NCBI RefSeq assembly: GCF_006345805.1
Contig: NC_042998.1
Location: 173,972,001-174,036,000, forward strand
DNA: 64,000 nt
DNA from: Octopus sinensis
Lineage: Eukaryota
Direction: 5' to 3'
A program made the translations under genes and the position numbers. Shown here one piece after another: positions 1,110 through 64,000 of the stretch. The notes beneath the pieces were generated by a model that ran no database searches, was not told the origin of the DNA, and saw only the letters and a list, made by a program, of their open reading frames with translations. Numbering within the stretch: position 1 is the first letter of the stretch; every line of letters begins with the position of its first letter.

Positions 1110-1905
1110 GGCGACGAGCTGGCAGAAACGTTAGCACGCCAGGCGAAACGCTTAGCGATATTTCGTCTGTCGTTACGTTCTGAGTTCAAATTCCGCCGAG
1201 GTCGATTTTGCCTTTCATCCTTTCGGGGTCGATAAATAAAGTACCAGTTTCGCACTGGGGTCTATATAAGCGACTTAATACTTATGTCTGTCCTTGTTTG
1301 TCCCCTCTATGTTTAGCCCCTTTTGGGTAATAAAGAAATAGGTATTTCGTCTGCCGTTACGTTGTGAGTTCAAATTCCGCCGAGGTCGACTTTGCCTTTC
1401 ATCCTTTCGGGGTCAATAAATTAAGTACCAGTTATGCACTGGGGTCGATGTAATCGACTTAATCCCTTTGTCTGTCCTTGTTTGTCCTCTCTGTGTTTAG
1501 CCCATTGTGGGTAGTAAAGAAATAGGTATTTCGTCCGCCGTTACGTTCTGAGTTCAAATTCCGCCGAGGTCGACTTTGCCTTTCATCCTTTCGGGGTCGA
1601 TAAATTAAGTACCAGACGCACTGGGGTCGATCTAACCGACTTAATCCTTGTGTCTGTACTTGTTTGTCCCCTCTATGTTTAGCTCCTTGTGGGCAATAAA
1701 GAAATAAGAAACGTTAGCACGCCGGGCGAATTCCTTAGCGATATTTCGTCTGTCTTTACGTTCTGAGTTCAAATTCCACCGAGGTCGACTTTGCCTTTCA
1801 TCCTTTCGGGGTCGATAAATTAAGTACCAGCTGCGTACTTGGGTCGATCTAATCGACTAGCTCCCTCTCTCCAAAATTCCCGGCCTTTTGCCAAGATTAG
1901 AGAAG
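1110..1905 (+). mobile_element. Tandem array of four units of tRNA-derived SINE family A (Nin/Deu-like central domain)
   Basis: Unit 1 (1110-1340) has A-box TGGCAGAAACGTTAG and B-box GAGTTCAAATTCC. Units 2 (1341-1524) and 3 (1525-1706) lack the head; unit 4 has a different 3' end. All carry GTCGACTTTGCCTTTCATCCTTTCGGGGTCGATAAATTAAGTACCAG. Confidence 0.9.
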
Positions 1906-3420: not shown

Positions 3421-3598
3421 TAGAAATGCACGGTTAGGTTATGATGATTTTTGAGCCAAGGGTAAGGTATACTGAATAGTTTACAGTGTCAATACAGCAT
3501 AACGAATGCTAAGACACAGAAGTTTCTGACCATGTTGCATCCTAGTGGACATGACTCTAGAGCAATCTAAGCATAAAGTATCGCTTTTACTCTCTGTC

Positions 3599-4017
3599 TA
3601 TTTCTTTTCTACCCACAAGGGGCTAAACACAGAGAGAGAGGACAAACAAGGACAGACACACGGATTAAGTCGATTATATCGACCCCAGTGCGTAACTGGT
3701 ACTTATTTAGTCGACCCCGAAAGGATGAAAGGCAAAGTCGACCTCGGCGGAATTTGAACTCAGAACATAGCGGCAGACAAAATACCTATTTCTTTACTAC
3801 CCACAAGGGGCTAAACACAGAGAGGACAAAGAAGGACAGACAAACTGATTAAGTCGATTTGATCGACCCCAGTGCGTAACTGGTACTTATTTAATCTACC
3901 CCGAAAGGATGAAAGGCAAAGTCGACCTCGGCGGAATTTGAACTCAGAACGCAACGGCAGACGAAATATGGCTACGCATTTCGCCCGGCGTACTAACGTT
4001 TCTGCCAGCTCGCGCCT
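3599..4017 (-). mobile_element. SINE family A dimer (full unit plus headless unit)
   Basis: Reverse complement of the 1110-1524 pattern: full unit 3787-4017, headless unit 3599-3786, same internal junction. Confidence 0.9.
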
Positions 4018-4389
4018 TCTTTTACTCTCTTTCTGTTTATCTCTTTCTCTTTATTTTTCTCTTCCTCTTTCTCTCTCTGTTTCTCTTTCTTATTCTTTCT
4101 CTCCCATTCATTCTCTTTGTCGTTCTCTCCGACTTTTTCTCTTTCTCTGTCGTTCTCACTATGTAGGAAATGCAATATTTGCAATTAACTTGAATTTCAG
4201 ATATTATAGAAAAAAAAGTACTATTCTGTACATTACAGTGTCTTTCAGTGACATTGTCAGACTTATAAACCTTGGCTTAGGCTCTTAATGCTTGATGGAG
4301 TCGAAGAGACGGTGTCATGCCGTGTTTTTGGTATTTTTAGATATTACTGAGGCCATCTCTTTCCACAATTAAGTATTGCCTATTTCTAA

Positions 4390-5180: not shown

Positions 5181-5590
5181 TTTACTCTTTTACTTGTTTC
5201 AGTCATTTGAGTGCCGCCATGCAGGAGCACCGCCTTTAGTCGAGCAACTCGACCCCGGGACTTATTCTTTTTGTAAGCCCAGTACTTATTCTATCGGTCT
5301 CTTTTGCCGAACCGCTAAGTGACGGGGACGTAAACACACCAACATCGGTTGTCAAGCAATGCTAGGGGGACAAACACAGACACACAAACATATACACACA
5401 CACTTATATATATATATACATACATACGACAGACTTCTTTCAGTTTCCGTCTACCAAATCCACTCACAAGGCATTGGTCGGCCCGGGGCTATAGCAGAAG
5501 ACACTTGCCCAAGATGCCACGCAGTGGGACTGAACCCGGAACCATGAGGTTGGTTAGCAAGCTACTTACCACACAGCCACTCCTGCGCCT
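5181..5590 (-). mobile_element. tRNA-derived CORE-like SINE family B, full length
   Basis: Minus strand: A-box TGGCTGTGTGG, B-box GGGTTCAGTCCC, CORE-like TCTTGGGCAAGTGTCTTCT, internal AT/GT microsatellite, tail AATGACTGAAACAAGTAAAAGAGTAAA. Confidence 0.9.
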
Positions 5591-6144
5591 AATATTTTGT
5601 CTAATATATTTTACAGGAATTTGTCCAGATAGCATTTGACGATTGTGAGCTTAATGTCTGCTTAAATGAGGTGGGATCTGTTAATGAAAAAATAATGCTT
5701 GTTACAATGTTGGTATGTGATATAAGCTCGGGTTGTGTGTAGGACCTATGAACGTGGGCCAAGCCTTAAGTGACTTGTTATATTGATACTAACATCGTTT
5801 GGATAACATTGACGTTTATCTGTTATCTTTTGCTTCTTTCATGCATTGACCGCCTATAGCCGAACAAATCGAATACAGGACATATTTTTAAAGCACAGTA
5901 ACATACATATTTCTAAACCCTAGTAACAGTTAAGATACAGGGCTTTAAATACACCAACACCGGTTGTCAAGCTGTGGTGGGTGACAAACACTGACACAAA
6001 GACACACACAAATAGGTATGTATATACATACATACATACATACATCATACGTACGTACGTACGTACATACATCATCCTTAGACGTATACATAACCTCTAA
6101 CTCATAATTTATATGTATACACACACCCACAACACACACACACA

Positions 6145-6164
6145 ACACATATATATATATATAT

Positions 6165-6214
<50 letters not shown>

Positions 6215-6248
6215 ATATATATATATATATCTATAATATATATATATA
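6145..6248. repeat. (AT)n microsatellite, representative of many AT tracts (also about 47-110, 6745-6795, 12490-12630, 14290-14390, 15095-15360, 16510-16760, 18130-18250, 54510-54890, 55055-55135, 59235-59405, 62298-62345, 62585-62690)
   Basis: Read directly. Confidence 0.95.
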
Positions 6249-6302
6249 TTTTAAAATTATAAGTATATGAAAGAATGGAGTTGAACGACTAGTTAACAAA
6301 TA

Positions 6303-6399
6303 TCCTTTATTCTCGACATATGTTTCGAGGGCTGCATATTCCTAATTCCGAAGGAATAAGGGGTACATTATGCAGATTTCTCATCAGGAAAATCAAGGA
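6303..6399 (-). ncRNA. Type I minimal hammerhead ribozyme (left arm)
   Basis: Minus strand: stem I TCCTTGATTTTC / GAGAATAAAGGA, core CTGATGA, stem II GA..CTGCATA/TATGCAG..TC, GAAA, palindromic ACATATGT, cleavage triplet GUC. Confidence 0.85.
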
Positions 6400-6452
6400 A
6401 CTTATGTCGACATCAAAATGCACATTTGATGCATTTTGATGTCGACATAAGT

Positions 6453-6548
6453 TCCTTGATTTTCCTGATGAGAAATCTGCATAATGTACCCCTTACTCTT
6501 CGGAATTAGGAATATGCAGCCTTCGAAACATATGTCGAGAATAAAGGA
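6453..6548 (+). ncRNA. Type I minimal hammerhead ribozyme (right arm)
   Basis: Stem I 6453-6464 pairs with 6537-6548 (11 of 12 pairs); CTGATGA 6465-6471; stem II GAA+CTGCATA / TATGCAG+TTC; GAAA 6525-6528; CATATG then TC; predicted cleavage after 6536. Confidence 0.88.
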
Positions 6549-6755
6549 TATTTGTTAATAGTCATTCAACTCCATTCTTTCATATACTTATAATTTTAAA
6601 ATAAACATACAAATTTCCGCACGAAGACACGTAGTCTATGCCCTGTGGACGTAGCTTCAACCGTGTTCTTTCTTGTGGAATTGCTACCCATGTATCGGTT
6701 ATCTTTCGAATTATCCTTAATAAGATAATTCATTCAATTACTCAATATATATTAT

Positions 6756-6799
<44 letters not shown>

Positions 6800-6800
6800 A

Positions 6801-8004
6801 TTGGGTCATCCCATAAATAATGAGGTTTCTTATACTTCTTTTATTTTTCAAAATTAAGACAAGGTTCATTTTTAATCTAAAATATACCCTCCTTAATTTT
6901 TTACATTGTACCTCCGTCTATATGGTAGACTTGGAAGGCCCGCTCTTCCAAAATCCACTTGTCCGTGACGAAAAATACACCTCGAGTGCTGTTCTAACCT
7001 CGTCTACAGAATTCATATTTTTTCCGTCCCAGTGATTTTGAAGACTGCGGAATAAATGATAATCAAATGGGGCAATGTCCGGTAAATACAGTGGGTGGAG
7101 CATCGTTTCCCATTCAAACTGCTCCAACCTTTCGAATGTCATCCTCGCTGTATGTGGCAGAGCATTATCCTCCTGGAAGAACACCTTTCGTCTTGAAACT
7201 TAAGCCTCTCAAGCTGCTCACAGTAGATCTCCTTTCTTATCGTTTGGTTTGGGTTTAAAATGTTTTAGTCGACTAAACCTTTCATATGCCACCAAGCAGA
7301 TAACAACACCTTACGTGGATGAAGAACTTCTTTAGCCTGAGTTACCGGTGTTTATCGTTTCCCTACCTACTGTCTTCAGCGCTTGACATTTTTATAGAGA
7401 ACCCATTTCTCGTTACCAGTTACTCTTAGGTCCAAAAAAGCTTCATTCGTTAAACGTGACAGCAAAGAAGCGCACACATTTTCTCTCTGTGCGCAATTAG
7501 ACTCGGAATGTTTGTGAGAAACCCATTGACCGAATTTGTTGACTTTTCCGATGGTACGCAAGTATCGATGAATGCTTGAATGACCAAATTCAAGCCTCAC
7601 TGCTAGTTCTTCTAGGACGTCCTCATCGAGCTTTACAGACCTGCTCGTCTTTTAGGATGTAGCTTCCGACTCGAAATTTCTGGAACCCCCGTTGAAACTT
7701 GTTTACACTTATTGTCCAATCTCCATATGCTGCATTAACATTGCTCGCACTTTCCGTTGCGTTGTTGCCTTTATTGAACTTATAAAGGAAAATATGCCGA
7801 ATATGTTCCTTTGTCACTTCCATTACAGCTTTGAAAAAATAACTGTTAAAATCAAACTGCACTCTTCAAAACTTGCACTAAGAATAAGTACAAGGTTGAA
7901 TTACTACTTGCTTCTTTAGCAAGTTGATGTAGGGAGTTTATCCCGTCCCCCTCCGACTTTTAGTTCATGCATTATTTAAAAACCGCATTTATAGGATGAC
8001 CCAA
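6801..8004 (-). mobile_element. Full-length mariner transposon with inactivated transposase
   Basis: TIRs TTGGGTCATCCCATAAATAATGAGGTTT and AAACCGCATTTATAGGATGACCCAA followed by TA. Transposase pieces MEVTKEHIRHIFLYKFNKG (ATG at 7823), GQWVSHKHS..VTGNEKWVLYKNVKR, QEDNALPH..HPLYLPDIAPFDYHLFRSLQN. Confidence 0.93.
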
Positions 8005-8165: not shown

Positions 8166-9002
8166 GTGTGGCGCTAGCGGTGATGTTGGAGAAAATAATA
8201 TTTGTGTCTTTCGAGAGGATTACAATAGTCATGTACTGTCATACGGCTTCCTTTCAGTTGCAGTCCATTTTCTTTGAATTTTCTTTTTTTTTTTTCTTCA
8301 TTTTTGCGTGTTTCAATTCAATTCTTATAAGGATATGTTATGCATAGACAGGCCGTAATGAGCAGTAACCAGCAATATACAAGGAGAGACCAGGAGAGTG
8401 CAGAGAAAAGAAGAATGATGTCATTAGTATCTGTGGACAGTAACGTTGTAAAGTGATATGTGCACTCTGCGGTCCATAACGACTTAATCATTTGATTTGT
8501 ACAGATATGAAACTACATGTATATAGAAAATATGCACACCTTATAACGCGAAATATCTAATCGTGAAAAAAAAAACAGACTCAGTGACTGGAACTCATGT
8601 CAAGGGAAATAACTAATAAATACAAATTGAGAGTAATTTCCCCTGCTTACTGCGAAAATACTTCAGATAAATATTTGTTATATTTATTGAATGCTGGACA
8701 ATCTACGCGCCTGCTTCAATTTCTCAAGTATCTATTAATGTATAATGAAAAGCCATATAGAATTTCACTATTTCATCTGTTTATGATATGGTATAGAATT
8801 TTTTGTCGGTCTTGTTTTTAGCTGTAAGTTTTCTTTTTTTCTCTAGCATTGGCGTCGAGAACAAAATTGTTAATTCTGTCACTTGGTCAGCAGATGGTAA
8901 AATTTTGAAAATTTGGCTACTATTTTTAATTGGTATTATTGTTGTTGCTCTTTAACCCTAGGTCAAGTCTCTCCAATAATTCTACATAGTAGAAAGTATA
9001 CG

Positions 9003-9482
9003 AACCGTAACCATATCACTCTTCTAGTGACAGTTGTAACCTTCCCATTTTAGAAAGTAACAGAACGAGTGATCTGTGTCTCTGTCTATCTGTCTACCTG
9101 ACTATTGGTCTACATCATTAGTAATTAAATTCGAGCTCTTCCTTTACACATTTTCTCTCTCCTTAGGCGAAAGATCAGTAGAGAAACCTTAGATAAATCT
9201 TCTCCCGACGACTTATGAACAGAAGTTACTGACAAGTAACTGAATTTTAATTATCTTGACCATATCCGTGACCATATCTTGACCATAACCGTAACCATAT
9301 CACTCTTTTAGTGACAGTTGTAACCTTCCCATTGTAGAAAGTAACAGAACGAGTGATATGTGTCTCTGTCTACTTGTCTACATCATAAGTAATTAAATTT
9401 GAGCTCTTTCTTTTACACACTTTTTCTCTCCTCAGGCGAAAGATCAGTAGAGAAACATCAGATAACTCTTCTCGCGACCACG
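9003..9482 (+). repeat. Local direct duplication, two units of about 200 bp (9003-9210, 9288-9482)
   Basis: Both begin AACCGTAACCATATCACTCTT..AGTGACAGTTGTAACCTTCCCATT and end GGCGAAAGATCAGTAGAGAAAC..AGATAA.TCTTCTC; short GACCATATC repeats lie between them. Confidence 0.85.
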
Positions 9483-9976
9483 GAAACAATTCGCTGTAGA
9501 TATTCGAACACGAACCACAAACCTCACAGACGGTTGTTCTCTTATCTAACAAAGTGCTGAATAACCTTAGTATATGTTTTAGCAAGCTCCCTATTTAAAA
9601 TGAGAAATATGCACAAAAGATGCGTAGTATAAGTTCTCTTTACAAATTAAGTTTAAGTATGATCTGTAGTCCCCAAAGCCTTTGTAGAACATTCCAAACT
9701 TCAAAAGTTTTGTAAATAGATGGAACGTTTTTGAATAGAGAAACAAGCGTTAATGTACTTAATGTGACGGGACTGTACCTAGGGGAGGTAAGCATTGCTA
9801 AACAATGCGTAACTCAACCAAACAACAGAGAAGGGACACAACTTAAACCTAAAAGGGAATTCGACAAAAATACGGTACTTGAATTGATACATCTCAGACC
9901 CCAAATTTACTAAAACAGAAAATGTTATTTGGTGAGGGGGAGAGAGGTGGGATCTTCATCAGACATAGTGACAACT

Positions 9977-10029
<53 letters not shown>

Positions 10030-10067
10030 CTTCTTCTTCTTCTTCTTCTTCTTCTTCTTCTTCTTCT
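9977..10067. repeat. (GTT)n(CTT)n compound microsatellite
   Basis: Read directly. Confidence 0.97.
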
Positions 10068-10445
10068 TGTTTAGTCCTAAGGCTGACTCTGGCATTCCAG
10101 TCGTGACCATATTTAAGAAGGCTGTGCTCTTTCCACTTTTATGTAGATTGGTCGTAAAATTGATGGAGATTTGTTAATTCTAGCAGTTTGTACACCCATG
10201 TGAAAACCACGTAGTTGATTCATATTGTAATTCTGATGGCTGCAGAGTAAAACATGAGCAGATGAGACAGGGTTTTTCGTGAATGCTTGACCTGTTAGAA
10301 ATAGAAACAAACTCCCCCTCAAACCACATCCTGCGGTTTTAAAAAGCCAAGGACGCATTAAAGAATACAGTATGGCTACGGCTGGGTTGCTTTTCATAAT
10401 AGATCAGTAATATCAGGATTGAACTGAGATGGGGTTAAATAGCAA
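10065..10445. mobile_element. Short non-autonomous element with degenerate inverted terminal motifs (MITE-like)
   Basis: Starts GTTTAGTCCTAAGG..GGCATTCCAGTCGTGACCAT; its end reverse-complements to GTTGCTATTTAACCCC..AAAAGCAACCCAGCCGTAGCCAT. Confidence 0.45.
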
Positions 10446-10654
10446 CTTGGAAATTGCAGGAATTGCACTTTTGCGAATAAGGATTGGGCAAAGTGACGTG
10501 TGTCTAAGACATAGTCAGAAAAATGAGAAGAGAATCAAGCGATGAAGTAGAGTTACCAGAGTTAGAGGTAGAGGTCACGGAGACAGGGTAGAGGAGACAG
10601 ACACAGAGAGAGGGGGGAAGACAGAGAGAGAGAGGGGGGGAGATAGCTCAGGAA

Positions 10655-11450
10655 GCAGAAATCGGTAGCTTCTTTCGTTGTGAGGACGACCAGATAGTAA
10701 TTTTAATGAATCTTGAAAACAGATAAGCACAAAGGAAGCCTGCCTCGATAAATTGGGAAGTCTTAGAAAATGTCTACTTAGTTGTGTACATTTGTACATA
10801 GATAAAACACAGACATCACTGCTTGTCTGTGTTTAGTACTGTGTTTAACTTGCTTTTGTTGCTTAGTTCAAGGTTAACCGAGTACACCTCGGTTAAAAGG
10901 CATTCCAGTCTTGAGCAGACAATATTTTAGGCTTCTCCAGGACTACATCATCCCTGGTACTAAAATAATCCTTACGACCAGGAATCCACATCGGACTATT
11001 AGCACGGGACAAATAGAATTCTCGTGTAACTGTGAAAGGAGAACCTCCACTGTATGCGGCATAAAGATCTGCAAGTCGGAAAAGGGATGAGCAAAGACTC
11101 TATTGAATGAGCAGCAGTGCATTCTCCAGCATATGTGTTGGAAAAACAAAGCCAGAACTAGCAAAACAGCGTCATGGACATCCATGTTATTTGATATTAA
11201 ACGAGGAATTTGTACAGGCTCTTGAGACCAGACGCTGTAAGGTCAACTTGTCAACTGTAAGTCCAAAAGAATAATGCGAGACGTTGTACCGAAAAGTAAT
11301 ACAGAAATTGAATATGTTCATAGGGAAGAACATTCTGGAACACAAGATAGCCACATTCAAGCATATTGTTTATACTATATGCAGAGACGCTTGTGGCGTA
11401 AGAGATTCAAAAGTGAAATCCCCTACCATGAAACCCAGGCGCCAGTGAGA
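10655..11450 (+). mobile_element. 5' fragment of a HERO/NeSL-like RLE non-LTR element, paralog of 20505-21285
   Basis: Collinear similarity with 20505-21285, e.g. GGACTACAT.ATCCCTGGTACTAAAATAATCCTTACG, GGCTCTTGAGACCAGACGCTGTAAG, CCAG.CGCCAGTGAGA. Confidence 0.7.
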
Positions 11451-12544: not shown

Positions 12545-12606
<62 letters not shown>

Positions 12607-12632
12607 ATATATATATATATATATATATAATT

Positions 12633-13575
12633 AGTGAATGGAAGAAATGGAGTTGAACGAAGATTGTACAGAATTCTTTTATTACATTCTACACATGTTT
12701 CAAAGGACACAATTTTCCAAATTCTAATTAAATAAGGATACCATATTGCAGCTTTCTCTTCAGGAAAAAGCAGGAATTACGTTGACAGAACAAAACAAAA
12801 CAGAGGCGCAGCAAAGCAATTCGAACGAGGACGCTCCTTAAGAGCCCATGGTTAAACTGTTTATCAATGTACGTTGAAATCGGGGTTTGGTGGGGGCCGA
12901 CAAAAGGTCCGTTGGAATAATTACAGGTCAGGCCGCGGTCAAATCTGGTAGGTGAGGAATTAATGAGAACAAGGGGTGTGGAGATGTTCTGTGTGACCAA
13001 AACTAATGTTCTGAATATTTTAAGAATACAGGGTGTATTTTAGGGGCGAGACAAAACCTACCTAAAAGCATGTATGTGTATACTAGCCTATGTGTGCGCG
13101 GCCGTATGTTGGCGAGGGGTGCTAGATAATGAGCACTGCTGAAAAAACCTGTCAGGCGGCTGAAAAAAGTCTGTGTTCGTGTGTTAGTCTAGGCCTGCTT
13201 GTCTAAAAATTAACATCGTCAAAGAATCATAAGGGTATATATAATTCCAGCGTTTGCTTCCAAAAAAAAAAAACGACCAATCGCCTAATGGGAGTAATTT
13301 CCCCTTGCAAGAGTTATTCATAGATTTTTAAAAAAGTTTTTTCAAAAATTATTTCCAAAAATTATTTTAATTTTAATAGGGTAACAAGGTGTTAATTGTC
13401 TTAAGTGTCATTTATATGTAAGATAAGTATGACGCCGCCAATGGGGACATCGAAAAGCCGTCTGTAAAAGCCCGTTTACCAAACGGCCTCTGGCGAACAA
13501 TATGTGGAAAAGCTCAGAGTTACAAAGATTACACCTCCTTCTGCCCCTATCAGATTACACATCCTTCTGCCCCTA
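12633..13575 (-). mobile_element. Non-coding Penelope-like element remnant ending in a decayed HHR/pLTR of the same family as 6249-6601
   Basis: Minus strand: CTGAAGA (12763-12757), stem II GAAAG.TGCAAT/ATTGTG..CTTT, GAAA-CATGTG-TA (12702-12691); 3' flank TTCAACTCCATTT matches the 6.3-kb arms; (AT)n on both sides. Confidence 0.65.
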
Positions 13576-16755: not shown

Positions 16756-17482
16756 GACAAGTTTCCATACAGTTTCTGTCTATGAAATTCAGTCACAAAG
16801 CATTGGGTGGATCCGAGGCCATAGCAGAAGACACCTACCTTACGTGCTACAGAATAGGACTGAATCCGTAACCTTATAGCTGCAAAGCGATATTCTTTAC
16901 TACCAACTTGTCGACATGAACTCAGTCTTATAGAAGGTCGGCATCTTTCAAATCTGATTAAATACTGTGGCTGTTACAAGAAAACCAAGCGTTGAAGGTT
17001 TAACTTTTGCTATATTCTTCACATTTTGCTGCAGTGAAATTCCAGAATATATAGATAATGTAAAAGTTTAAGTTGTAGATCGTTCAATAAATTATGTAAA
17101 TGTGTAATACAGTGCGTTATAGAATGTGTAATGTTCAAAGGGTTCCCACTCGATATGTCTAATTACAATATTACAAATGAAGGATTTTGTTAATGAAAAG
17201 AACGCGTGTGTGCGAAAGTTTATGGATGGGAGAACGGCGATACAGTATGTGAAAGCAACCCTCCAAATGATTTAAGAAGTTTGCTTCGCAATCTATCAGT
17301 GCAAGATTCAGTCGCACTGCGATAATTTTGAGGCGTATTTCTCTTTATATATTTATATATATATTGTTGTATTTAGGAATGGTCATTTTGCCAGTTTAGC
17401 CAATGAAAACACACGCACTATACATTTGGTGTTACTTTGCTTCAGCGTTATTCACTTTTTACGTTAATCTTAATCTTATTTC

Positions 17483-17527
17483 GGCCATAGATCTTTCGTC
17501 ACACTCCTGTGACCTCATCAGTGGTCC
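17483..17527 (-). ncRNA. Type I minimal hammerhead ribozyme
   Basis: Minus strand GGACCA-CTGATGA-G-GTCACA-GGAG-TGTGAC-GAAA-GATC-TA-TGGCC: canonical core, 6-bp stem II, palindromic AGATCT stem III, UA cleavage site, stem I CCA/TGG plus GG/CC. Confidence 0.88.
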
Positions 17528-17713
17528 TTTGCTTTCTTCTTTCTTATTTGTGTGTCTCTCCTCACACACATACATACACACACACTAACTAAACATAGAA
17601 ACACATAGAAGTATACGCATGTGTAAATGAAGACACATACAATAGGAATAGGTAATACAAAATGGCTGACCGTTAGTAAGGAGAGACACACAAATAAAAA
17701 AGAAGAAAGCAAA

Positions 17714-17758
17714 GAACCACTGATGAGGTCACAGGAATGTGACGAAAGAACTCTGGCC
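17714..17758 (+). ncRNA. Type I minimal hammerhead ribozyme (stem III palindrome mutated)
   Basis: GAACCA-CTGATGA(17720-17726)-G-GTCACA-GGAA-TGTGAC-GAAA(17744-17747)-GAAC-TC-TGGCC. Confidence 0.8.
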
Positions 17759-18153
17759 GAAATAAGATTAAGATTAATGTTAGAAATTAATTACGCTGAA
17801 GCAAAGTAACACCAAATATATAGTGCGTGTGTTTTTATTGGCTAAACTGGCAAAATGACCATTCCTAAATACAACAATATATGTTTCAACACACGATTTT
17901 ATATATATATATATATGTTGATAGAAATGGTAAGACAACAAAAGAATGAAAGAGACCTCGATATTATGAAGAGATGGTGGCGTGGATTTCCACTCCGATA
18001 TCCGAAACTCATGGCAACCGAATAATTGTCACATATTATATTTACACACACATACACACACACACACCACACACACACACACCACACACACACACTCACA
18101 CACACACACACACACACCACACACACACACATATATATGTATATATATATATA

Positions 18154-39129: not shown

Positions 39130-40260
39130 TAAGAAGGATTGACGTAACTCTTCACAAAGGTACACAGTCAAGAAGAAGAGAGCGATTCGATTGTAAGATA
39201 TTTTATTAGTTGAACGATATTTCAACAGTACATTTGTCTTTGTCAAGTTCAATATAAGAAGTGATAAAAATTCAAAATTACAGAAATTTAAAAGCAAAGA
39301 ATGAACGAGAGTAACGAGCGTCCACACGTTGATGGAATGACATCATCAGTTTTTAAGTTATAATCTTATAACAGGCGAAAAGAAAAAAACAGAAAAAAGA
39401 AGACGACAGAAGAAAAAGAAAAGCAAAAGAGAGAAAGAAGAATATTTGATCAAACAGTTTTGTATAAATTTGATGATATTCTCCTATCATCTTATTCATT
39501 CCTCCAGGGCGTGATGTTAATAACGCGTAAACATATTTCTCCTCATACATTCTGAGAAGCGAAAGTGAAGCAGATTCAGAATATTTTCTGAAAATATGCA
39601 ATTTCAAGTCCTCTTCAAAACTGCAGCCGTTTGAAATGAAATGTTCAACAAGTTCTGTCGAACTACTGTTATTGTGCCTGACATTGAATCTGTGCCTATT
39701 AAACCTTTTTGCTTAATTGTTTTGTTGTGCAACCAACGTAAATTAAGTTGTGTTTCGTGCATTCTGCAGCGTACATCAAATGGGAATCTTTACATGTTCC
39801 ACTTTCTGTATAAATCATAACATTTCTGTTATGATTTCTGATGGAATCCACTTCACTCACGTTGTTGCACAATGAACAGGGCTTACTTCTCTTTCGGCTG
39901 TTCTTTAAAGCACAGCGTGTAGATACTCCAATGTTCGTTTTCTTGGAGTCAGATATAGAGGTCAATAATTCTCTTATATTCTTATTCTGTCTAAAGTCTA
40001 CAATAGGCGGCTGAGTAAATATCTGTTTGAAGCGAGGATATTTTTTGCCACATGCTGGTAACTTTCATGCAACACTTTTGAAATTCCAGTGAAATGTCGG
40101 TGCCAGTTAATCACTAAAGGGATTCTGTCATCTATTGTATTGCGTTTGCTAAAATTAAGCGTATAGGTTTGACTATCTTTGCTAATCTTAGCTATTTCAT
40201 TTTCTATTTCCTTTGAAATCCCCGCTGGCATTTCAAAAGTGTTGCATAAAAGTTACCAGC
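39130..40260 (-). mobile_element. Penelope-like element 3' fragment with GIY-YIG endonuclease and CxxC linker (Neptune/Naiad-like)
   Basis: RIPLVINWHRHFTGISKVLHE, KPCSLCNNV, GTCKDSHLMYAAECTKHNLIYVGCTTKQLS, RFNRHRFNVRH..ELVEHF, YEEKYVYALLTSRPGGMN; 3' UTR runs into a TAA tract. Confidence 0.85.
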
Positions 40261-40844: not shown

Positions 40845-43135
40845 ATAACTTAGCTAAGTTTAAGACAAATTTTGTGGTATCAGGGTCCATTAGAGTAGGG
40901 AGTTCTTGTTGGGTGAGTTATATCCAGGTATAGGTGGCTGATTTCGTATTCCTTGAAAATATTTGTTCAGATTCCGTGTAAAGGTCATTGAATCCTTTTC
41001 TTCTTTGATCTGTTTCAGGACACTGTTTAAATATGGTAGGGCCTGTTGAGGAAAAAAATTGTGTTGCAGTGAATTTGTGTGTTGTGATCCTGAATTGCAT
41101 AGAGGAAGTATGGCACGTGTCCCAGCCTTGGATGAGTTCTGAAACTATGTTGAGGTCGTTTGGGCAATGGTGGTAGTATATTCTTCACATCGTGCAAATG
41201 ATGTATCGCTCATGGCAGTGCTGGAGAGGACAGTGTATCGATGCTTTAAGGCGATCGCAATAATCGCAATAATCGAGATCATTCTTTTAGTTACTGTCCC
41301 TGGGGTGATTCAATTTTCGAAATATTTATTTTTGTATGGGGAGACCACCGGGGGCAGTAGAGTTCGAGGTGTGGCCGTACAAAGGAGGGGAAAAGGGGAA
41401 TGATGACACCTTGTTCTCTGGACAGAAGATTCTTAGGATCCAGGAGCACACCCTGCGAGCAAATTTTTGATGTGGGCGTTACAGCTCAGACTGTTGTCAA
41501 CAATTGCTCCTAGGACTCTGATATTACTAGATGCTGTTATTGGTTCCCTTGAAGGAAGAAAATATGGCTGTTTTAGCAAAGACTTTCTTCCAAAATGCAT
41601 CAGCTCAAACTTTCCCTCGTTTAGTTTCATTTTGTTTTTGTCTGCCCATTGATTTACAGGATGTAGATCAGACTAGAGTTCAGTTCGGTCTTCTTCTCCA
41701 TTGATACTTTTCTGGAGCTTGGATTCATCAACGAATATTTTCACTTTGCAGTGTTTTAATACGCTGGAAAGGTCGTTTATCTAGACTATAAACAGAAGCG
41801 GGCTCAAGACAGTCCCCTGAGGGATACCACTGGTGACATCTGCTGGGCTTGAGTGGATTGTATCGATTACATGTGATGTTCTGTTCTCCAGGAAATACTC
41901 AATCCAGTGTAGTAGTTTTCCACGGATTCCAACATTTGACAATTTTGACAGTAGGATATTGTGGTCGACTCTGTCCAACACTTTACTGAAGTCAAGGTAT
42001 ATAACATCAGAGTTCGAACCTGATCCCAAGGTTTTAAGGACATCATCGATGTTGTGTAAGAGCTGTGTTAGACAGCCGCTGCCGCAGCGAAAGCCACGCT
42101 GGTTTGGATTTAGAAGATTCTGGTTCTCCAGGAAGACAGCTATACTTGATTTCACCACACTTTCAAACACTTTAATTATATAGGACTTTAATGATATGAT
42201 ACGCATTCTTCAAAGCACTTTAGAGGTGCTTGGGGAGGCTTGTAGAGACCATCAATGGTTATGTCGTTGGCCTTGATGAATAATGATATGGACTCGCAGC
42301 AGCCATTGGAAAATATGTCTTCGGCATCAGTTGCAAAGGAGTCATGGAGAAAAATGGCTGTTACTCCTTTATTTCGGTCTGCGCAATCTGCACGAATGAT
42401 GGTGAGATTTTTTTTTGATTCACCTCGGCATCCATGTGAGTGCTGTTTACGTGAGTTTCAGGAAGGATAAAGAAAAGGATGCAGTATGCCGTTTCGGCAA
42501 ACCAAATCTCTATGTATGGGATCTTCCATTGTTTGAGTGAAAGGGTGATGCCACGTATATTTAGCAAGAATGTCGAAGCAAGGCTAGTTTGTATTGCTCT
42601 AAGTGCTTAGTCTAATGTGTTATGTTGTTCAGAGGAAGCAGTGAGGGTAGTTTTTGTATGGAGGTGTGTTCCTTGTTTTTTACATACACGGCAGTTGATA
42701 GCTCGTTGGATCTCCCGGCTTAGTTCGACCATCATATTTTCTAGATAAGTTAGTAAAAAAGAGTTACCTCTTTGGTTTCCCATTTGGTCATATGATACAT
42801 TGTTCATGTTTATGTTATTTGGTGTTATGATGTTCCCATAGTACTGTCTTCGTTGTTTGGTTTTAGGAGATGAAATGTGGTTGTAGTTTGTTTTTGATGT
42901 TATTGTTTTACTTCTCTGTTGCTGTCTATATTTTATTTTTCGTTTGTTTTCTGTCCTTCAAATAGTGGTAATTGCATTCTAGGTTAGGGCATATCAATAG
43001 TAACACAGAATTTGGGGACAGTTTAGGATGGGAGAATGCGCATCCGTTGCTTTTGTGCATCCATATTTAGGATCAGGACCATAGACTCTGTATTTAGGAC
43101 AATATTTGGGTGAATGTGCAGGCAGTTCTTTTCCA
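40845..43135 (-). mobile_element. CR1/L2-group LINE (APE-RT) with a large internal deletion and ORF1 CCCH-finger remnant
   Basis: RT: NQRGFRCGSGCLTQLL..VIYLDFSKVLDRVDHNILLSKL..SGIPQGTVLSPLLFIV and KLNEGKFELMHFG. APE: GNQRGNSFLL, GLYKPPQAP. ORF1: CLHIHPK.C..GCTK..SHPKLCP. Confidence 0.9.
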
Positions 43136-47600: not shown

Positions 47601-48253
47601 ACACATACACACATACATACATTCGCGCGCTCGAGCACGTACAGATACATTGTCAGACAGACAAACAAACAGGATTTGCTTGATTTTTCTCTTAAACGTG
47701 GAGAGCACGGATGTCTTTTCATTCATGATGGAGATCTAAACTTTTTTGCATGATACGATAATACCACTCACACTGACACATACTTTGACCTCATGGGATA
47801 TTTCATTGACTATTTTACCCTTTTGGCAACGGCCACCCATAATATACAACACATTATAAAGACGTTAATAAATATGTTAAAACTCAAGCGATGCCTGTGC
47901 TTATAGATTTAAACGAGGAAAGGTTTTACAAGGTCCAAGCCCACTGTCTCTTCAACGAAAGCATTTGCCACAAAAGCATTAATCTATGTCATTGAATACA
48001 AACGTATTTACAGTATCAATTACATCAGAGGTTTTCGTCTCCTAAAGAGAGATATGTCAATAAAGACTTCAGGGTCATTCACTGCAAGCATTTGGATGAC
48101 CGTTGAGTCTCTTGAGTTCATCCGCCCTTTGACAGGTTTTGTTTTTCATCCTGCAGAGTGTTCAAAACAAATAACATCCTTCTTATCAACTAAGTGGTGG
48201 CATTTTACTTGCCGATGGTCCATTCTACAGGTTATACTGAGGTAGATAGATAA

Positions 48254-48484
48254 GGCGGCGAGCTGGCAGAAACGTTAGCACGCCGGGCGAAATGCGTAAC
48301 CGTATTTCGTATGCCGTTACGTTCTGGGTTCAAATTCCGCCGAGGTCGACTTTGCCTTTCATCCTTTCGGGGTCGATAAATTAAGTACCAGTTGAGCACT
48401 GGGGTTGATGTAATCGACTTAATCCGTTTGTCTGTCCTTGTTTGTCCCCTCTGTGTTTAGCCCCTTGTGGGTAGTAAAGAAATA
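48254..48484 (+). mobile_element. Full-length SINE A monomer with 16-bp target-site duplication
   Basis: TATACTGAGGTAGATA at 48233-48248 and 48485-48500 flanks the element. Confidence 0.95.
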
Positions 48485-49556
48485 TATACTGAGGTAGATA
48501 TTCCCATTAACACTATATGTGACCTGACATGATATACATAAATACAGATATATGCAAACATAGATATATTGGTGCTTGAAAAGTAAATAGGTATCGAAGT
48601 TCTTTAAATTACATATCAGCTAAAGAAGAGTTGGCGGCGTTTAGATTGTAACACAAATGACTAGAGCTATCAGTGCAAAGTTTACAATGTACAGTAAATA
48701 TTAACTCTATGTAAGGTAAAGATTATCGTGAGCAATATAGCTCCTAGGGATTACAGTAGGATTTTTAAAAGGTTAGTAATGATACACAAGCAACACAAAC
48801 ATAAATGTAGAATATATTTGGATGCATATACTAAATATGTTATGATAAAATATCCATGAGCATCTCCCGCAAATTAAGAAAGTGTAAAGAGGGGATTTGA
48901 CCTCTTCGTGTGTTTCCGCTTAAAAACCGAGCCCAGAGTTATTCGCCGTAATCTCTCGATTCTGCACCTCATTTTTACAGTTGAAGAAATTAGGTCATGT
49001 CGGCAGAGAAATAGCTGTCATTTTCTGTAAATGAGAACAAGTTCTCAAGAACAAACCAGGTATTAATCCATTGATATACTTATTTGAACGGTGTCGTATC
49101 TTATGGAATACTGAAATAAGAAAATATCATTATTTCAGACGTGTATTGTCAGCAATTACATTGATGACATGGAGCATTAAGTCGACACTGGCCAACTTTG
49201 AAATATCAAATTTTCTGCAGCGTCACGATACATATGCTAGCTCAGTAAAACAAACCCAGAAAAAAGATAAGATCTGTATGATGGGAATTTGTTCCGCATC
49301 CTTGTTGCTCACAGGGTTTATCACTTTTTACAATCACCATATCTTTTTTTATACGTGGAAGAACATTCAAGATGAAAGACGTTGAACAGAAAACGTTATA
49401 GATTTTTGTTTCCAGGAGAACTCAGAATTTCTCGAACATTACCCTTCCTTTATATAATGATAGGGATTATATTATTGATAAAATAATATCTATTTTACTA
49501 AAATGATTTTTGTTTCTTTCTCAGTTTTTGAAAATGCGTAAAATAAATACATGCAT

Positions 49557-52508: not shown

Positions 52509-52724
52509 TACTCTTTACTCTTTTACTTGTTTCAGTCATCTGACTGCGGCCATGCTGGAGCACCGCCTTTAGTCGAGCAAATCGACCCTAGGACTTATTC
52601 TTTGGAAGCCTAGTACTTATTGTATCAGTCTCTTTAGCCGGACCGCTAAGTTACGGGGACGTAAACACACCACCATCGGTTGTCAAGCGATGTTGGAGGG
52701 ACAAACACAGACACACAAACATAT

Positions 52725-52797
<73 letters not shown>

Positions 52798-55053: not shown

Positions 55054-55117
<64 letters not shown>

Positions 55118-55134
55118 TGTATGTATGTATGTAC

Positions 55135-55830
55135 ATATAACTTCAGTTCCCACCATACATAAAGAGAGAGATTGTTCAATTCCTACAATCCGTTAAGAGA
55201 GGGATTGCTCAGTGCCTAAAACATCGACCAAAGGATATATGTAGCGATCCTGATACACACCAGGAAGAAATGATCAAGCTAAGTAACAATCTATAAGCAA
55301 CAACTACCCCAAAAACATACTATCCATTTCAATTATAAAGAAAAGGGGGGATGAACTCTATAAACTGGCCACAGTCTGTTTACCCTAGGTAAAAAGGCCT
55401 CTCCCAAAAGATACAAAAGATATGCGGCCCATATGCCATCGAGATAGAATTCAAGAGTAATCCAACACTTCGCAAATATCTCCTTCGAGTAAAACCACCA
55501 GTAGAAGAGAATGTGATCAAAAACTGCATGCACGCCATCCCATGCGGCTGTGGTAGGTAATACAAAGACGAAACATGCCGGCCCCCTCAAAATAAGGGTC
55601 GACGAACATCGCAAAGCTGTGACAGGAGGAGATATTGATAAATCGGGTATAGCTGATCAAGTATGGAAAAACGGAGACCATCTCCCGCCTGTGGGAGGAA
55701 GTTAAAATAATAGACAGAGAACACAACTGGAAAATAAGAAACCTAAAGGGAGCAGCTCATATGCTAGAACCGAGTGCCGATACGAGTAACATGGGAACCA
55801 GTATTAAGGAAGGATAGGAAAATATTAGAT
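55135..55830 (+). mobile_element. Penelope/Poseidon-type PLE fragment (RT thumb plus GIY-YIG)
   Basis: FSSHH..KRGIAQCL..ICSD..QEE..NNYP, VCLP*VKGLSQKIQKIC, FKSNPTLRKYL, IPCGCGR*YK.ETCRPLKIRVDEHRKAV..SGIAD.VW..DH, WEEVKIIDRE.NWKIR. Confidence 0.85.
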
Positions 55831-55934
55831 TTATAAGCCGTAAAAATTAACTCCATAATTGCCCACAGACATATGGCGTAGTGCTTAAGAGCGCGGGGCG
55901 GTGATCAGAATATCAATAATAATAATAATAATAA

Positions 55935-56055
55935 TATCATCGAAAAATACCTTAGGAATGAGAGCCCAGGTTCGAAATTTCCCCAAGACACCTGGTGAAA
56001 CGTTGTATTAACAACAAACAAGATCAGGACAAATATCCGTCAAATGTAAATAATG
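55935..56055 (+). mobile_element. pLTR-like segment with an HHR lacking stem II
   Basis: AGACAC-CTGGTGAAACGTT-GTATT: the 5' core and GAAACGUU overlap on GA; follows a (TAA)n run. Confidence 0.4.
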
Positions 56056-63868: not shown

Positions 63869-64000
63869 TACTCTTTACTCTTTTACTTGTTTCAGTCATT
63901 TGACTGCGGCCATGCTGGAGCACCGCCTTTAGTCGAGCAAATCGACCCCAGGACTTATTCTTTGTAAGCCCAGTACTTATTCTATCGGTCTCTTTTGCCG
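63869..64000 (-). mobile_element. SINE family B 3' part, truncated by the window edge
   Basis: Near-identical to 52509-52640. Confidence 0.92.

What the first reader, a model, noticed from the sequence alone, without database searches (positions are those of the whole stretch)
6249..6601. Second, unrelated HHR family in a 353-bp near-perfect palindrome with a 7-nt spacer
Seen: arms about 96-97% identical; each has a 12-bp stem I, CUGAUGA, an unusually long branched stem II (53 nt), GAAA, palindromic ACAUAUGU and a GUC site. The long stem I and extended stem II differ from the shortest PLE HHRs and could add tertiary contacts. A 7-nt spacer also makes this a cruciform-prone, long dsRNA-forming locus.
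Basis: partly seen in the sequence, partly recalled or inferred. Interest (0 to 1): 0.85.

Follow-up and report, generated by a model that had tools for sequence, protein, structure and literature searches.

The report
Head-to-head hammerhead retroelement copies
The 353-bp palindrome, in what is very probably an octopus genome, is two back-to-back copies of a small non-coding mobile element carrying a convincing self-cleaving hammerhead ribozyme with an unusually long second helix; it is a new example of a well-known kind of animal genome parasite, not a new kind of system.

Summary
Arms 6249-6422 and 6430-6601 are 97.1% identical around a 7-nt spacer. Read outward from the centre, each arm carries a type I hammerhead (HHR). 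Rfam Hammerhead_1 matches both arms end to end (29 bits, E about 8e-6), but only when the speed filters are relaxed. The score is below the gathering score of 34 because helix II carries a 49-50 nt insertion. Helix II is an interrupted hairpin, not branched.

A third, solo copy (12627-12797, minus strand, 70% identical, decayed) shows that the mobile unit is the ~173-nt arm, not the palindrome. Two of the three 3' ends run directly into (TA)n (chance about 1e-4). The window holds another outward-facing inverted HHR pair at 17.3-17.9 kb and a decayed Penelope-like element (PLE).

Best reading: a head-to-head double insertion of a non-autonomous PLE/retrozyme-type retroelement. PLE proteins are known to cleave and extend both target strands, and inverted copies are a known PLE signature.

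Not shown: self-cleavage, covariation (three copies are too few), a link to a specific autonomous PLE, and independent confirmation of the assembly.

Verdict: a new member of a known kind, of modest interest.

The parts
6149..6248 (.). (TA)n microsatellite directly abutting the 3' (outer) end of the left arm
   Evidence: The TA/AT dinucleotide fraction is 0.92 against a window mean of 0.20.
6249..6422 (-). Left arm: one ~173-nt copy of the element, sense strand on the minus strand, 3' end at 6249
   Evidence: 97.1% identical to the right arm.
6303..6399 (-). Hammerhead type I motif of the left arm (stem I 12 positions, CUGAUGA, 54-nt helix II, GAA, ACAUAUGU, C17 at 6315). Predicted cleavage is between 6315 and 6314.
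   Evidence: Rfam RF00163 matches 6393-6309 at 29.1 bits, E=8.5e-6, model positions 1-45 of 45. Descriptor hit.
6423..6429 (.). 7-nt spacer CATTTGA. Together with the first bases of the right arm it forms a short tandem duplication, CATTTGATG|CATTTTGATG.
   Evidence: read directly from the sequence.
6430..6601 (+). Right arm: second copy of the element, sense strand on the plus strand, 3' end at about 6590-6601
6453..6548 (+). Hammerhead type I motif of the right arm. C3-A9 is 6465-6471, helix II is 6472-6524 (tip cUUCGg at 6498-6503), G12-A14 is 6525-6527, helix III is 6528-6535 and C17 is 6536. Predicted cleavage is between 6536 and 6537.
   Evidence: Rfam RF00163 matches 6459-6542 at 29.2 bits, E=7.4e-6, full-length model. 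The HHR-compatible fold is -16.2 against an MFE of -17.8 kcal/mol.
12627..12797 (-). Third, solo, diverged copy of the same element (70% identity). Its HHR core is intact except the free position N7 (U->A) and H17 (C->A). Stem I is degraded and there is no inverted partner.
   Evidence: BLAST, 162 nt, E=6e-11; alignments A1 and A2; no RF00163 hit.
12563..12626 (.). (TA)n tract directly abutting the 3' end of copy 3
   Evidence: TA/AT dinucleotide fraction 0.97.

Best explanation
The locus is a head-to-head (inverted) pair of copies of a short, non-coding retroelement of about 173 nt that carries a hammerhead ribozyme. The element is a non-autonomous derivative of Penelope-like elements (PLEs), the same broad kind as animal non-LTR retrozymes. 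It is copied into the genome by PLE-type target-primed reverse transcription next to a (TA)n tract.

Each arm is an RNA-sense copy with its 3' end pointing outward, which is the geometry expected from one integration event. Either (a) both cleaved target strands primed cDNA synthesis on the element RNA, as PLE protein does in vitro, or (b) one cDNA snapped back and copied itself. Option (b) would also explain the equal arms, the 7-nt loop and the presence of (TA)n on only one side. I cannot separate (a) from (b).

The ribozyme is a classical type I HHR. It has 6 bp of helix I before an interruption, the G10.1-C11.1 pair, and a 2-bp helix III with a palindromic AUAU loop that lets two molecules form a double hammerhead. 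Its helix II is extended to 53-54 nt by a hairpin insertion. The ribozyme's role belongs to the element's RNA stage: processing multimeric or read-through transcripts, and possibly making circles.

At this locus the ribozyme is most likely inert, because a transcript through the palindrome would fold into a hairpin with ~173-bp arms.

Shown: the sequence anatomy, the Rfam match, three copies, the (TA)n association, and PLEs in the same genome. Inferred: mobilisation by a PLE, the way the palindrome formed, and catalytic activity.
For: - HHR identity. RF00163 matches both arms over the full model at 29.2 and 29.1 bits, E about 8e-6. The core CUGAUGA/GAA/A15.1-U16.1/C17 and G10.1-C11.1 are all present. 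The HHR fold is within 1.6 kcal/mol of the MFE, and the homodimer MFE is the double hammerhead with an 8-bp helix III (-43.0 against 2 x -17.8 kcal/mol).
- The unit is the arm. A solo copy at 12627-12797 aligns to arm positions 11-165. It keeps every conserved core base while differing at 30% of positions overall. Its only core changes are at N7 and H17, the positions free to vary, and 11.1 C->U keeps a G.U pair.
- Retroelement-type junctions. Two of three 3' ends abut long (TA)n tracts, P about 1e-4 by chance.
- Non-coding. A 61-aa translation of the element has no relative among 1.84 billion representative proteins.
- Context. A second outward-facing inverted HHR pair lies at 17352-17889. 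A decayed canonical PLE at 55141-56015 starts at a (TA)n tract. The same head-to-head layout surrounds a PLE with ORFs in L022.
- Literature. PLE insertions are 5'-truncated and often have an adjacent inverted copy, carry HHRs near their 3' ends and prefer (TA)n targets (PMC8557442). PLE protein cleaves and extends both target strands (PMC11167929). Animal retrozymes are PLE derivatives (bioRxiv 10.64898/2026.07.22.740005). A small palindromic helix III and dimeric action are typical of metazoan type I HHRs (PMC4209133).
- A natural mutation spectrum between the arms: 3 transitions, one of them CpG->TpG.
Against: - The Rfam score is below the family's gathering score (29 against 34), and the standard scans missed the motif.
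- Three copies, two of them near-identical, give no statistical covariation. There is 1 double-sided change, and 185 of 500 shuffles do as well. Helix II of copy 3 folded alone is no more stable than shuffled sequence, z=+0.5.
- There is no sequence link to any PLE ORF or pLTR. No further copy was found in about 155 kb of other eukaryotic DNA, about 60 kb of it Octopus.
- The right arm's 3' end does not abut (TA)n, and copy 3 has (TA)n only on its 3' side. Simple insertion into the middle of a (TA)n tract is therefore not what is seen.
- The unit is not unusually self-paired as linear or circular RNA, z about 0. There are no tandem copies, so the retrozyme hallmarks are absent.
- Cleavage is untested, and PLE HHRs are often poorly active in vitro (PMC4209133).
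Confidence: 0.6

Rival explanations
1. The arms are randomly 5'-truncated 3' tails (pLTR fragments) of a longer, autonomous PLE that carries this HHR, rather than unit-length copies of a short non-autonomous element.
For: Heavy 5' truncation and adjacent inverted truncated copies are the norm for PLEs (PMC8557442). In L022 an inverted ~165-nt HHR-bearing fragment abuts a PLE that has ORFs. Copy 3 could extend further 5' than can be judged, because the arms stop at the palindrome centre.
Against: All three copies start within about 10 nt of the same element position, which is unlikely for independent random truncations. None of the PLE tails recovered here resembles this element (window 55.1-56.0 kb, L019, L020, L022). 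The 500 nt upstream of copy 3 is unique and has no PLE coding signal.
Confidence: 0.2
2. A fold-back DNA transposon or MITE whose long terminal inverted repeats make up the whole element. The hammerhead-like motif would be a chance resemblance.
For: The structure is a near-perfect palindrome. It sits in TA-rich DNA, where a TA target duplication cannot be excluded. Mariner-type transposase remnants lie 0.3-1.3 kb away.
Against: A solo single-arm copy exists, so the arm is the mobile unit. The HHR match is full-length with E about 1e-5 per arm, and the core is conserved in the 70% copy. A second, unrelated HHR family has the same outward-facing architecture.
Confidence: 0.06
3. The palindrome is an assembly or long-read chimera artefact built from a single genomic copy.
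For: PLE tandem and inverted structures are known to cause assembly problems (PMC8557442). No independent assembly of this locus could be reached.
Against: The arms differ by 3 transitions (one CpG->TpG) and 2 non-homopolymer indels. The palindrome is small, internal and flanked by unique sequence. A second, older inverted pair (92% identity, 110-nt spacer) lies 11 kb away.
Confidence: 0.05
4. A host hairpin-RNA gene (miRNA, endo-siRNA or ADAR-substrate precursor) that is functional as a palindrome.
For: Generic miRNA-precursor models score on the palindrome centre (mir-561 at 56.7 bits). The read-through hairpin is extremely stable.
Against: All the miRNA hits are far below their gathering scores (56.7 against 90) and are symmetric on both strands, as expected for any long hairpin. 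The sequence is a repeat with a diverged solo copy. No expression or conservation data are available.
Confidence: 0.03

Closest known systems
Classical metazoan type I hammerhead ribozyme (Rfam RF00163; Schistosoma, newt and mussel satellite/retrozyme HHRs)
   Same: Full conserved core; type I topology; 6 bp of helix I before an interruption; the G10.1-C11.1 pair; a 2-bp helix III capped by a palindromic tetraloop that allows the double-hammerhead dimer (PMC4209133, PMC7229834).
   Different: Helix II is 53-54 nt, made of 3 bp, an internal loop and a long hairpin, where about 4 bp plus a loop is usual. This drops the score below Rfam's gathering threshold. There is no recognisable loop 1/loop 2 consensus. 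The genomic arrangement is inverted rather than tandem.
PLE 'min-HHRs' (Cervera & de la Pena 2014, PMC4209133)
   Same: The motif sits near the 3' end of a retroelement copy, has a palindromic helix III and would probably act as a dimer. It shares a genome with canonical PLEs.
   Different: It lacks the hallmark unpaired base between A9 and 10.1, and it has a long rather than a 4-5 bp helix I. The true min-HHRs in the window (17.5 kb) and in L020/L022 have those hallmarks and are not matched by RF00163.
Animal non-LTR retrozymes (PMC7229834; bioRxiv 10.64898/2026.07.22.740005)
   Same: A short (170-400 nt), AT-rich, non-coding unit with a type I HHR, now argued to be a non-autonomous PLE derivative.
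   Different: There are no tandem direct repeats here, which is the defining arrangement. The unit is not unusually self-paired as a circle. CircRNA is untested.
PLE complex insertions (Craig et al. 2021, PMC8557442; Frangieh et al. 2024, PMC11167929)
   Same: Outward-facing inverted copies, a 3' HHR, association with (TA)n, and a biochemical basis in cleavage and extension of both target strands.
   Different: No RT/GIY-YIG ORF is attached. Both arms have the same length, whereas a PLE usually shows a full copy plus a truncated inverted copy. (TA)n is present on one side only.
Naiad 'HHR_half_core' cases (PMC8557442, methods)
   Same: CUGANGA and GAAA are separated by an unusually long distance (35-50 nt there, 53-54 nt here) in a clade that targets (TA)n.
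   Different: No sequences were available for comparison, because the supplement is not held. The paper reports that cephalopod Naiads are old remnants. This is a lead only.

Membership tests
Hammerhead ribozyme, type I (RF00163) | Conserved core C3-U4-G5-A6-N7-G8-A9 ... G12-A13-A14 ... A15.1/U16.1-H17 | tested here: met
   All positions are present in both arms. They are also present in the 70%-identical copy 3, where only N7 and H17 changed.
Hammerhead ribozyme, type I (RF00163) | Three helices around the core with helix I open (type I), and the G10.1-C11.1 pair | tested here: met
   The CM alignment covers model positions 1-45 of 45 with all modelled pairs formed. The HHR fold is within 1.6 kcal/mol of the MFE.
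Hammerhead ribozyme, type I (RF00163) | Score at or above Rfam's gathering threshold (34 bits) | tested here: not met
   The scores are 29.2 and 29.1 bits. The shortfall comes from a 49-50 nt insertion in the helix II tip. The motif was missed entirely by the standard filters.
Hammerhead ribozyme, type I (RF00163) | Compensatory base changes supporting helices I and II | tested here: inconclusive
   Only 3 copies are available. There is 1 double-sided change (2 under a manual register), and 185 of 500 shuffles reach this level.
Hammerhead ribozyme, type I (RF00163) | Site-specific self-cleavage after H17 | not testable with these tools
   This needs an in vitro transcription and cleavage assay.
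Penelope-like element (autonomous) | ORF with a PLE-type RT plus a GIY-YIG endonuclease | tested here: not met
   There is no ORF in or next to the arms or copy 3. The translated element has no protein relatives. The PLE remnant in the window (55.1-56.0 kb) is unrelated in sequence.
PLE-type insertion signature (applies to non-autonomous derivatives) | HHR near the 3' end; 5'-truncated or inverted adjacent copies; microsatellite (TA)n bias | tested here: met
   The HHR cleavage site is 65 nt from the 3' end. The arrangement is an inverted pair. Two of three 3' ends abut (TA)n, P about 1e-4. Criteria are taken from PMC8557442.
Animal non-LTR retrozyme | Tandem direct repeats (two or more units), each with a type I HHR | tested here: not met
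   Only an inverted pair and a solo copy exist. No direct repeat of the unit occurs in the window.
Animal non-LTR retrozyme | Expressed as a self-cleaved, circularised RNA | not testable with these tools
   No RNA data are available. The circular fold is not more stable than shuffled sequence.
Fold-back / MITE DNA transposon | The element is always bounded by terminal inverted repeats and a target-site duplication | tested here: not met
   A solo single-arm copy exists at 12627-12797. A TSD cannot be scored in TA-rich flanks.

The most novel reading that the evidence does not exclude
This could be a cephalopod lineage of very short (~173-nt) hammerhead retroelements that PLE machinery integrates as unit-length head-to-head dimers at (TA)n. 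On this reading the 50-nt helix II extension would be a functional module, such as an RT/EN recognition site or a tertiary-contact element. The resulting perfect hairpin loci would be a recurrent source of long dsRNA for the exceptionally active ADAR editing or small-RNA pathways of coleoids.
Probability: 0.12. Interest if true: 0.55.

Novelty: new member of a known kind. Interest (0 to 1): 0.3.

Why it matters
The locus adds a hammerhead variant from cephalopods. The searchable literature holds no dedicated report of HHRs or retrozymes in that group.

It also shows that a good type I motif can be lost to Rfam's filters and thresholds simply because helix II carries a long insertion. Standard annotation of such genomes will therefore under-count ribozymes.

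The symmetric 2 x 173-nt dimer is about the simplest natural example of the inverted structures PLEs make, and how those structures form is explicitly listed as an open question (PMC8557442). A genome-wide census of this family could help separate two-strand priming from snap-back synthesis.

Otherwise this is ordinary repeat content.

Tried and rejected
- Rfam at gathering thresholds on the whole window, and at E<=10 on 651 nt, gave no hammerhead hit. This turned out to be a filter effect (then 47, 49). The miRNA hits are generic hairpin matches.
- Exact-pattern scans of the metagenome, prokaryotic-genome and viral collections with a 20-base motif conserved in all three copies returned only chance matches of about 24 nt.
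- I tried to reach more copies through proteins. The element's longest translation has 0 relatives among 1.84 billion representatives. A Tc1-like fragment gave one O. vulgaris locus with no copy. The PLE-endonuclease remnant gave O. sinensis, O. vulgaris and ENA loci with no copy.
- I tried to find the orthologous or identical locus through the mariner remnant next to the palindrome, and through exact ORF look-ups. Nothing usable came back. Empty-site and independent-assembly tests were therefore not possible.
- The supplement of Craig et al., which holds the Naiad HHR_half_core sequences, is not held.
- Rod-like or circular stability of the unit: z about 0, so no support.
- 'Branched' helix II is not supported by any fold.
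- My first impression of two compensatory swaps in helix II depends on the alignment register and is not statistically supported.

Full report
**The observation.** The sequence at 6249-6601 is a near-perfect palindrome. The left arm is 6249-6422 (174 nt), the spacer is 6423-6429 (7 nt) and the right arm is 6430-6601 (172 nt). A global alignment of one arm with the reverse complement of the other shows 3 substitutions and 2 one-base indels, which is 97.1% identity. All three substitutions are transitions and one is CpG->TpG. The indels are not in homopolymers. This looks like natural divergence rather than read error.

Read outward from the centre, each arm has this layout: a helix I 5' strand, CUGAUGA, a 53-nt (right arm) or 54-nt (left arm) helix II, GAA, ACAUAUGU, C, and the helix I 3' strand. 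In the right arm C3-A9 is 6465-6471, G10.1 is 6472, C11.1 is 6524, G12-A14 is 6525-6527, A15.1 to U16.1 is 6528-6535 and C17 is 6536. The mirror site is after C6315 on the minus strand.

Two details need correcting. Helix I spans 12 positions but has an A.G mismatch at the 7th position and one G.U pair. Helix II is predicted to be an unbranched, interrupted hairpin: 3 bp, a 2x2 internal loop, 7 bp, then a distal hairpin with a cUUCGg tip in the right arm. It is not branched.

**Is it a hammerhead?** Rfam at gathering thresholds found nothing in the window. A permissive scan of 6100-6750 returned only generic miRNA-hairpin matches caused by the palindrome centre. Both results were filter artefacts. 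When only the single-arm motif is scanned, Hammerhead_1 (RF00163) matches 6459-6542 (+) at 29.2 bits, E=7.4e-6, and 6393-6309 (-) at 29.1 bits, E=8.5e-6. Both matches cover model positions 1-45 of 45 and every modelled pair is formed. The only departure is a 49-50 nt insertion where the model expects a 10-nt helix II tip. The score is below the gathering score of 34, so formal Rfam membership is not met. Rescaled to the whole window, the E-value is still about 4e-3.

My own strict descriptor expects 0.115 hits per random 64 kb. The hammerhead-compatible fold (-16.2 kcal/mol) is within 1.6 kcal/mol of the MFE, and the MFE keeps helices I and II. Two molecules co-fold into the classical double hammerhead with an 8-bp intermolecular helix III (-43.0 against 2 x -17.8 kcal/mol). 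That is the behaviour described for metazoan type I HHRs with a small palindromic helix III (PMC4209133).

**A third copy, and what the unit is.** BLAST of one arm against the window finds a solo, diverged copy on the minus strand at about 12627-12797. It is 70% identical over 162 nt and covers arm positions 11-165 (alignments). Despite 30% divergence, all conserved core bases are retained. The only core changes are at N7 (U->A) and H17 (C->A), the two positions that are free to vary. The change 11.1 C->U keeps a G.U pair, and ACAUAUGU->ACAUGUGU stays self-complementary through G.U pairs. Helix I has decayed and RF00163 no longer matches, so this copy is probably dead.

The existence of a solo copy shows that the mobile unit is the ~173-nt arm and not the palindrome. 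Covariation cannot be established with three copies. The formal count gives 87.8% of cells paired, against 27-44% when partners are slid. It finds only 1 double-sided change, and 185 of 500 shuffles reach that level. Two apparent compensatory swaps in helix II depend on the alignment register, and helix II of copy 3 folded alone is no more stable than shuffled sequence.

**Junctions.** All three copies share the same 3' end (...CAUAUACUUAUAAU...). In the left arm and in copy 3 this end runs directly into long (TA)n tracts (TA/AT dinucleotide fraction 0.92 and 0.97, against 0.20 for the window). The window has 24 (TA)n tracts covering 1.9% of its length, so two of three oriented ends abutting a tract has a chance probability of about 1e-4. 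The right arm's 3' end abuts unique sequence instead, and copy 3 has no (TA)n on its 5' side. In each case (TA)n therefore lies on one side of the insertion only.

**Context.** The window is eukaryotic and very probably octopod.
- Transposase and PLE remnants have their closest named relatives in Octopus vulgaris, O. sinensis and O. bimaculoides.
- SINE-like repeats match O. vulgaris and O. sinensis loci at 88-98% identity.
- A second, unrelated inverted pair lies at 17352-17565 / 17676-17889 (214-nt arms, 92% identity, 110-nt spacer). It carries outward-facing HHRs with every PLE 'min-HHR' hallmark: a bulged base after A9, a 6-bp helix II, a short helix I and a palindromic helix III (PMC4209133). 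RF00163 does not match it.
- A decayed canonical PLE (RT/EN junction plus GIY-YIG, with frameshifts) lies at 55141-56015 and starts directly at a (TA)n tract.
- PLE loci fetched from O. vulgaris (L020) and from an unidentified ENA eukaryote (L022) carry min-HHRs. L022 shows the same head-to-head layout around a PLE that has ORFs, with a 7-nt filler inside the inverted junction.

**Mechanism.** The literature describes exactly this architecture for PLEs. Insertions are strongly 5'-truncated and often have an inverted truncated copy immediately adjacent. HHRs sit near the 3' ends. (TA)n is a preferred target in some clades (PMC8557442). A purified PLE protein cleaves and extends both target strands, unlike R2 and L1. 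It is predicted to be a homodimer, and HHR cleavage was not needed for insertion in vitro (PMC11167929). Animal retrozymes, which are short HHR-bearing tandem repeats, are now argued to be non-autonomous PLE derivatives (bioRxiv 10.64898/2026.07.22.740005).

The geometry here has the sense strands diverging from the centre with their 3' ends outermost. That is what cDNA synthesis primed from both nicked strands would produce. It is equally what a single cDNA would produce if it snapped back and copied itself at the 5' end of a short template. Snap-back would account neatly for the equal arms, the 7-nt loop and the one-sided (TA)n. I cannot discriminate between the two mechanisms with one locus.

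All three copies begin within about 10 nt of the same position. This favours a discrete short RNA, possibly a circle linearised at its AU-rich priming site, over random truncation of a long PLE. That point is an inference.

**Function at this locus.** A transcript through the whole palindrome would fold into a -279 kcal/mol hairpin that buries both ribozymes. The HHR is therefore most likely a relic of the element's RNA stage rather than active here. The dsRNA, cruciform and editing ideas are plausible consequences but remain untested.

**What failed.**
- Pattern scans of the public DNA collections gave only chance matches.
- The translated element has no protein relatives.
- About 155 kb of other eukaryotic DNA, about 60 kb of it Octopus, contains no further copy.
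- The orthologous or identical locus could not be reached.
- The supplement holding the Naiad 'HHR_half_core' sequences is not held.
- The unit is not unusually self-paired as a linear or circular RNA.

**Verdict.** The palindrome is best explained as an ordinary product of PLE-type retrotransposition of a short HHR-bearing non-autonomous element. It is a new member of a known kind. Its notable features are the long helix II insertion, which hides it from standard Rfam annotation, and its cephalopod origin. Interest is modest at 0.3.

Noticed in passing
window 17352-17565 and 17676-17889: A second inverted pair (214-nt arms, 92% identity, 110-nt AC-rich spacer). Each arm carries an outward-facing PLE-type min-HHR (+17706-17768, -17535-17473) with a bulged G after A9 and a 6-bp helix II. 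Helix III is the palindrome AGAUCU in the minus copy. Short TA tracts lie at both outer ends. RF00163 does not match it.
   Followed up: partly
window 55141-56015 (+): A decayed, 5'-truncated canonical PLE (RT/EN junction plus GIY-YIG, with several frameshifts) that begins directly after the (TA)n tract at 55057-55111. Its 3' tail (55975-56015) aligns with the min-HHR of an O. vulgaris PLE (L020 11934-11868), but the ribozyme core has been deleted (cacCTG|GTGAAACGTTGT).
   Followed up: partly
window 6801-7937 (-): A mariner/Mos1-like transposon remnant with frameshifts (HTH_48 E=8.6e-16; transposase relatives 36-48% identical), 0.3 kb to the right of the palindrome. It is separated from the palindrome by 143 bp of unique sequence and another (TA)n tract (6753-6794).
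   Followed up: partly
window 39702-40064 (-) and 41784-42209 (-): A LINE-type RT fragment (RVT_1, E=2e-15). About 1.7 kb downstream of it is an ORF with a CxxC ... GIY ... YIG-like layout that has no Pfam hit. It is unclear whether the two belong to one element.
   Followed up: no
window 6408-6448: The palindrome centre contains a short tandem duplication, CATTTGATG|CATTTTGATG, that spans the 7-nt spacer. Each arm also has the 10-nt palindrome ATGTCGACAT 9 nt from its inner end. Both could be footprints of how the two copies were joined.
   Followed up: no
window 1116-1858, 3598-4019, 5181-5586, 48252-48485, 52511-52757, 63869-64000: SINE-like repeats shared with O. vulgaris and O. sinensis loci at 88-98% identity. 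Together with abundant (TA)n, (CA)n and (TACA)n tracts, they support an octopod origin for the window.
   Followed up: partly
L022 8173-8335 and 10967-11105 (ENA ERZ21867824, unidentified eukaryote): A PLE with RT/EN ORFs (8678-10660, +) is flanked by outward-facing min-HHRs. The upstream one lies in an inverted copy of about 165 nt that contains a 7-nt filler, GTACGTC. This is the same head-to-head architecture as the finding, but it is not flanked by (TA)n.
   Followed up: partly
window 6100-6750, Rfam scans: Rfam's default and 'evalue' filters both dropped a full-length 29-bit Hammerhead_1 match, which appeared only when about 116 nt was scanned alone. HHRs with long helix II insertions are likely to be missed systematically in genome annotation.
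   Followed up: yes
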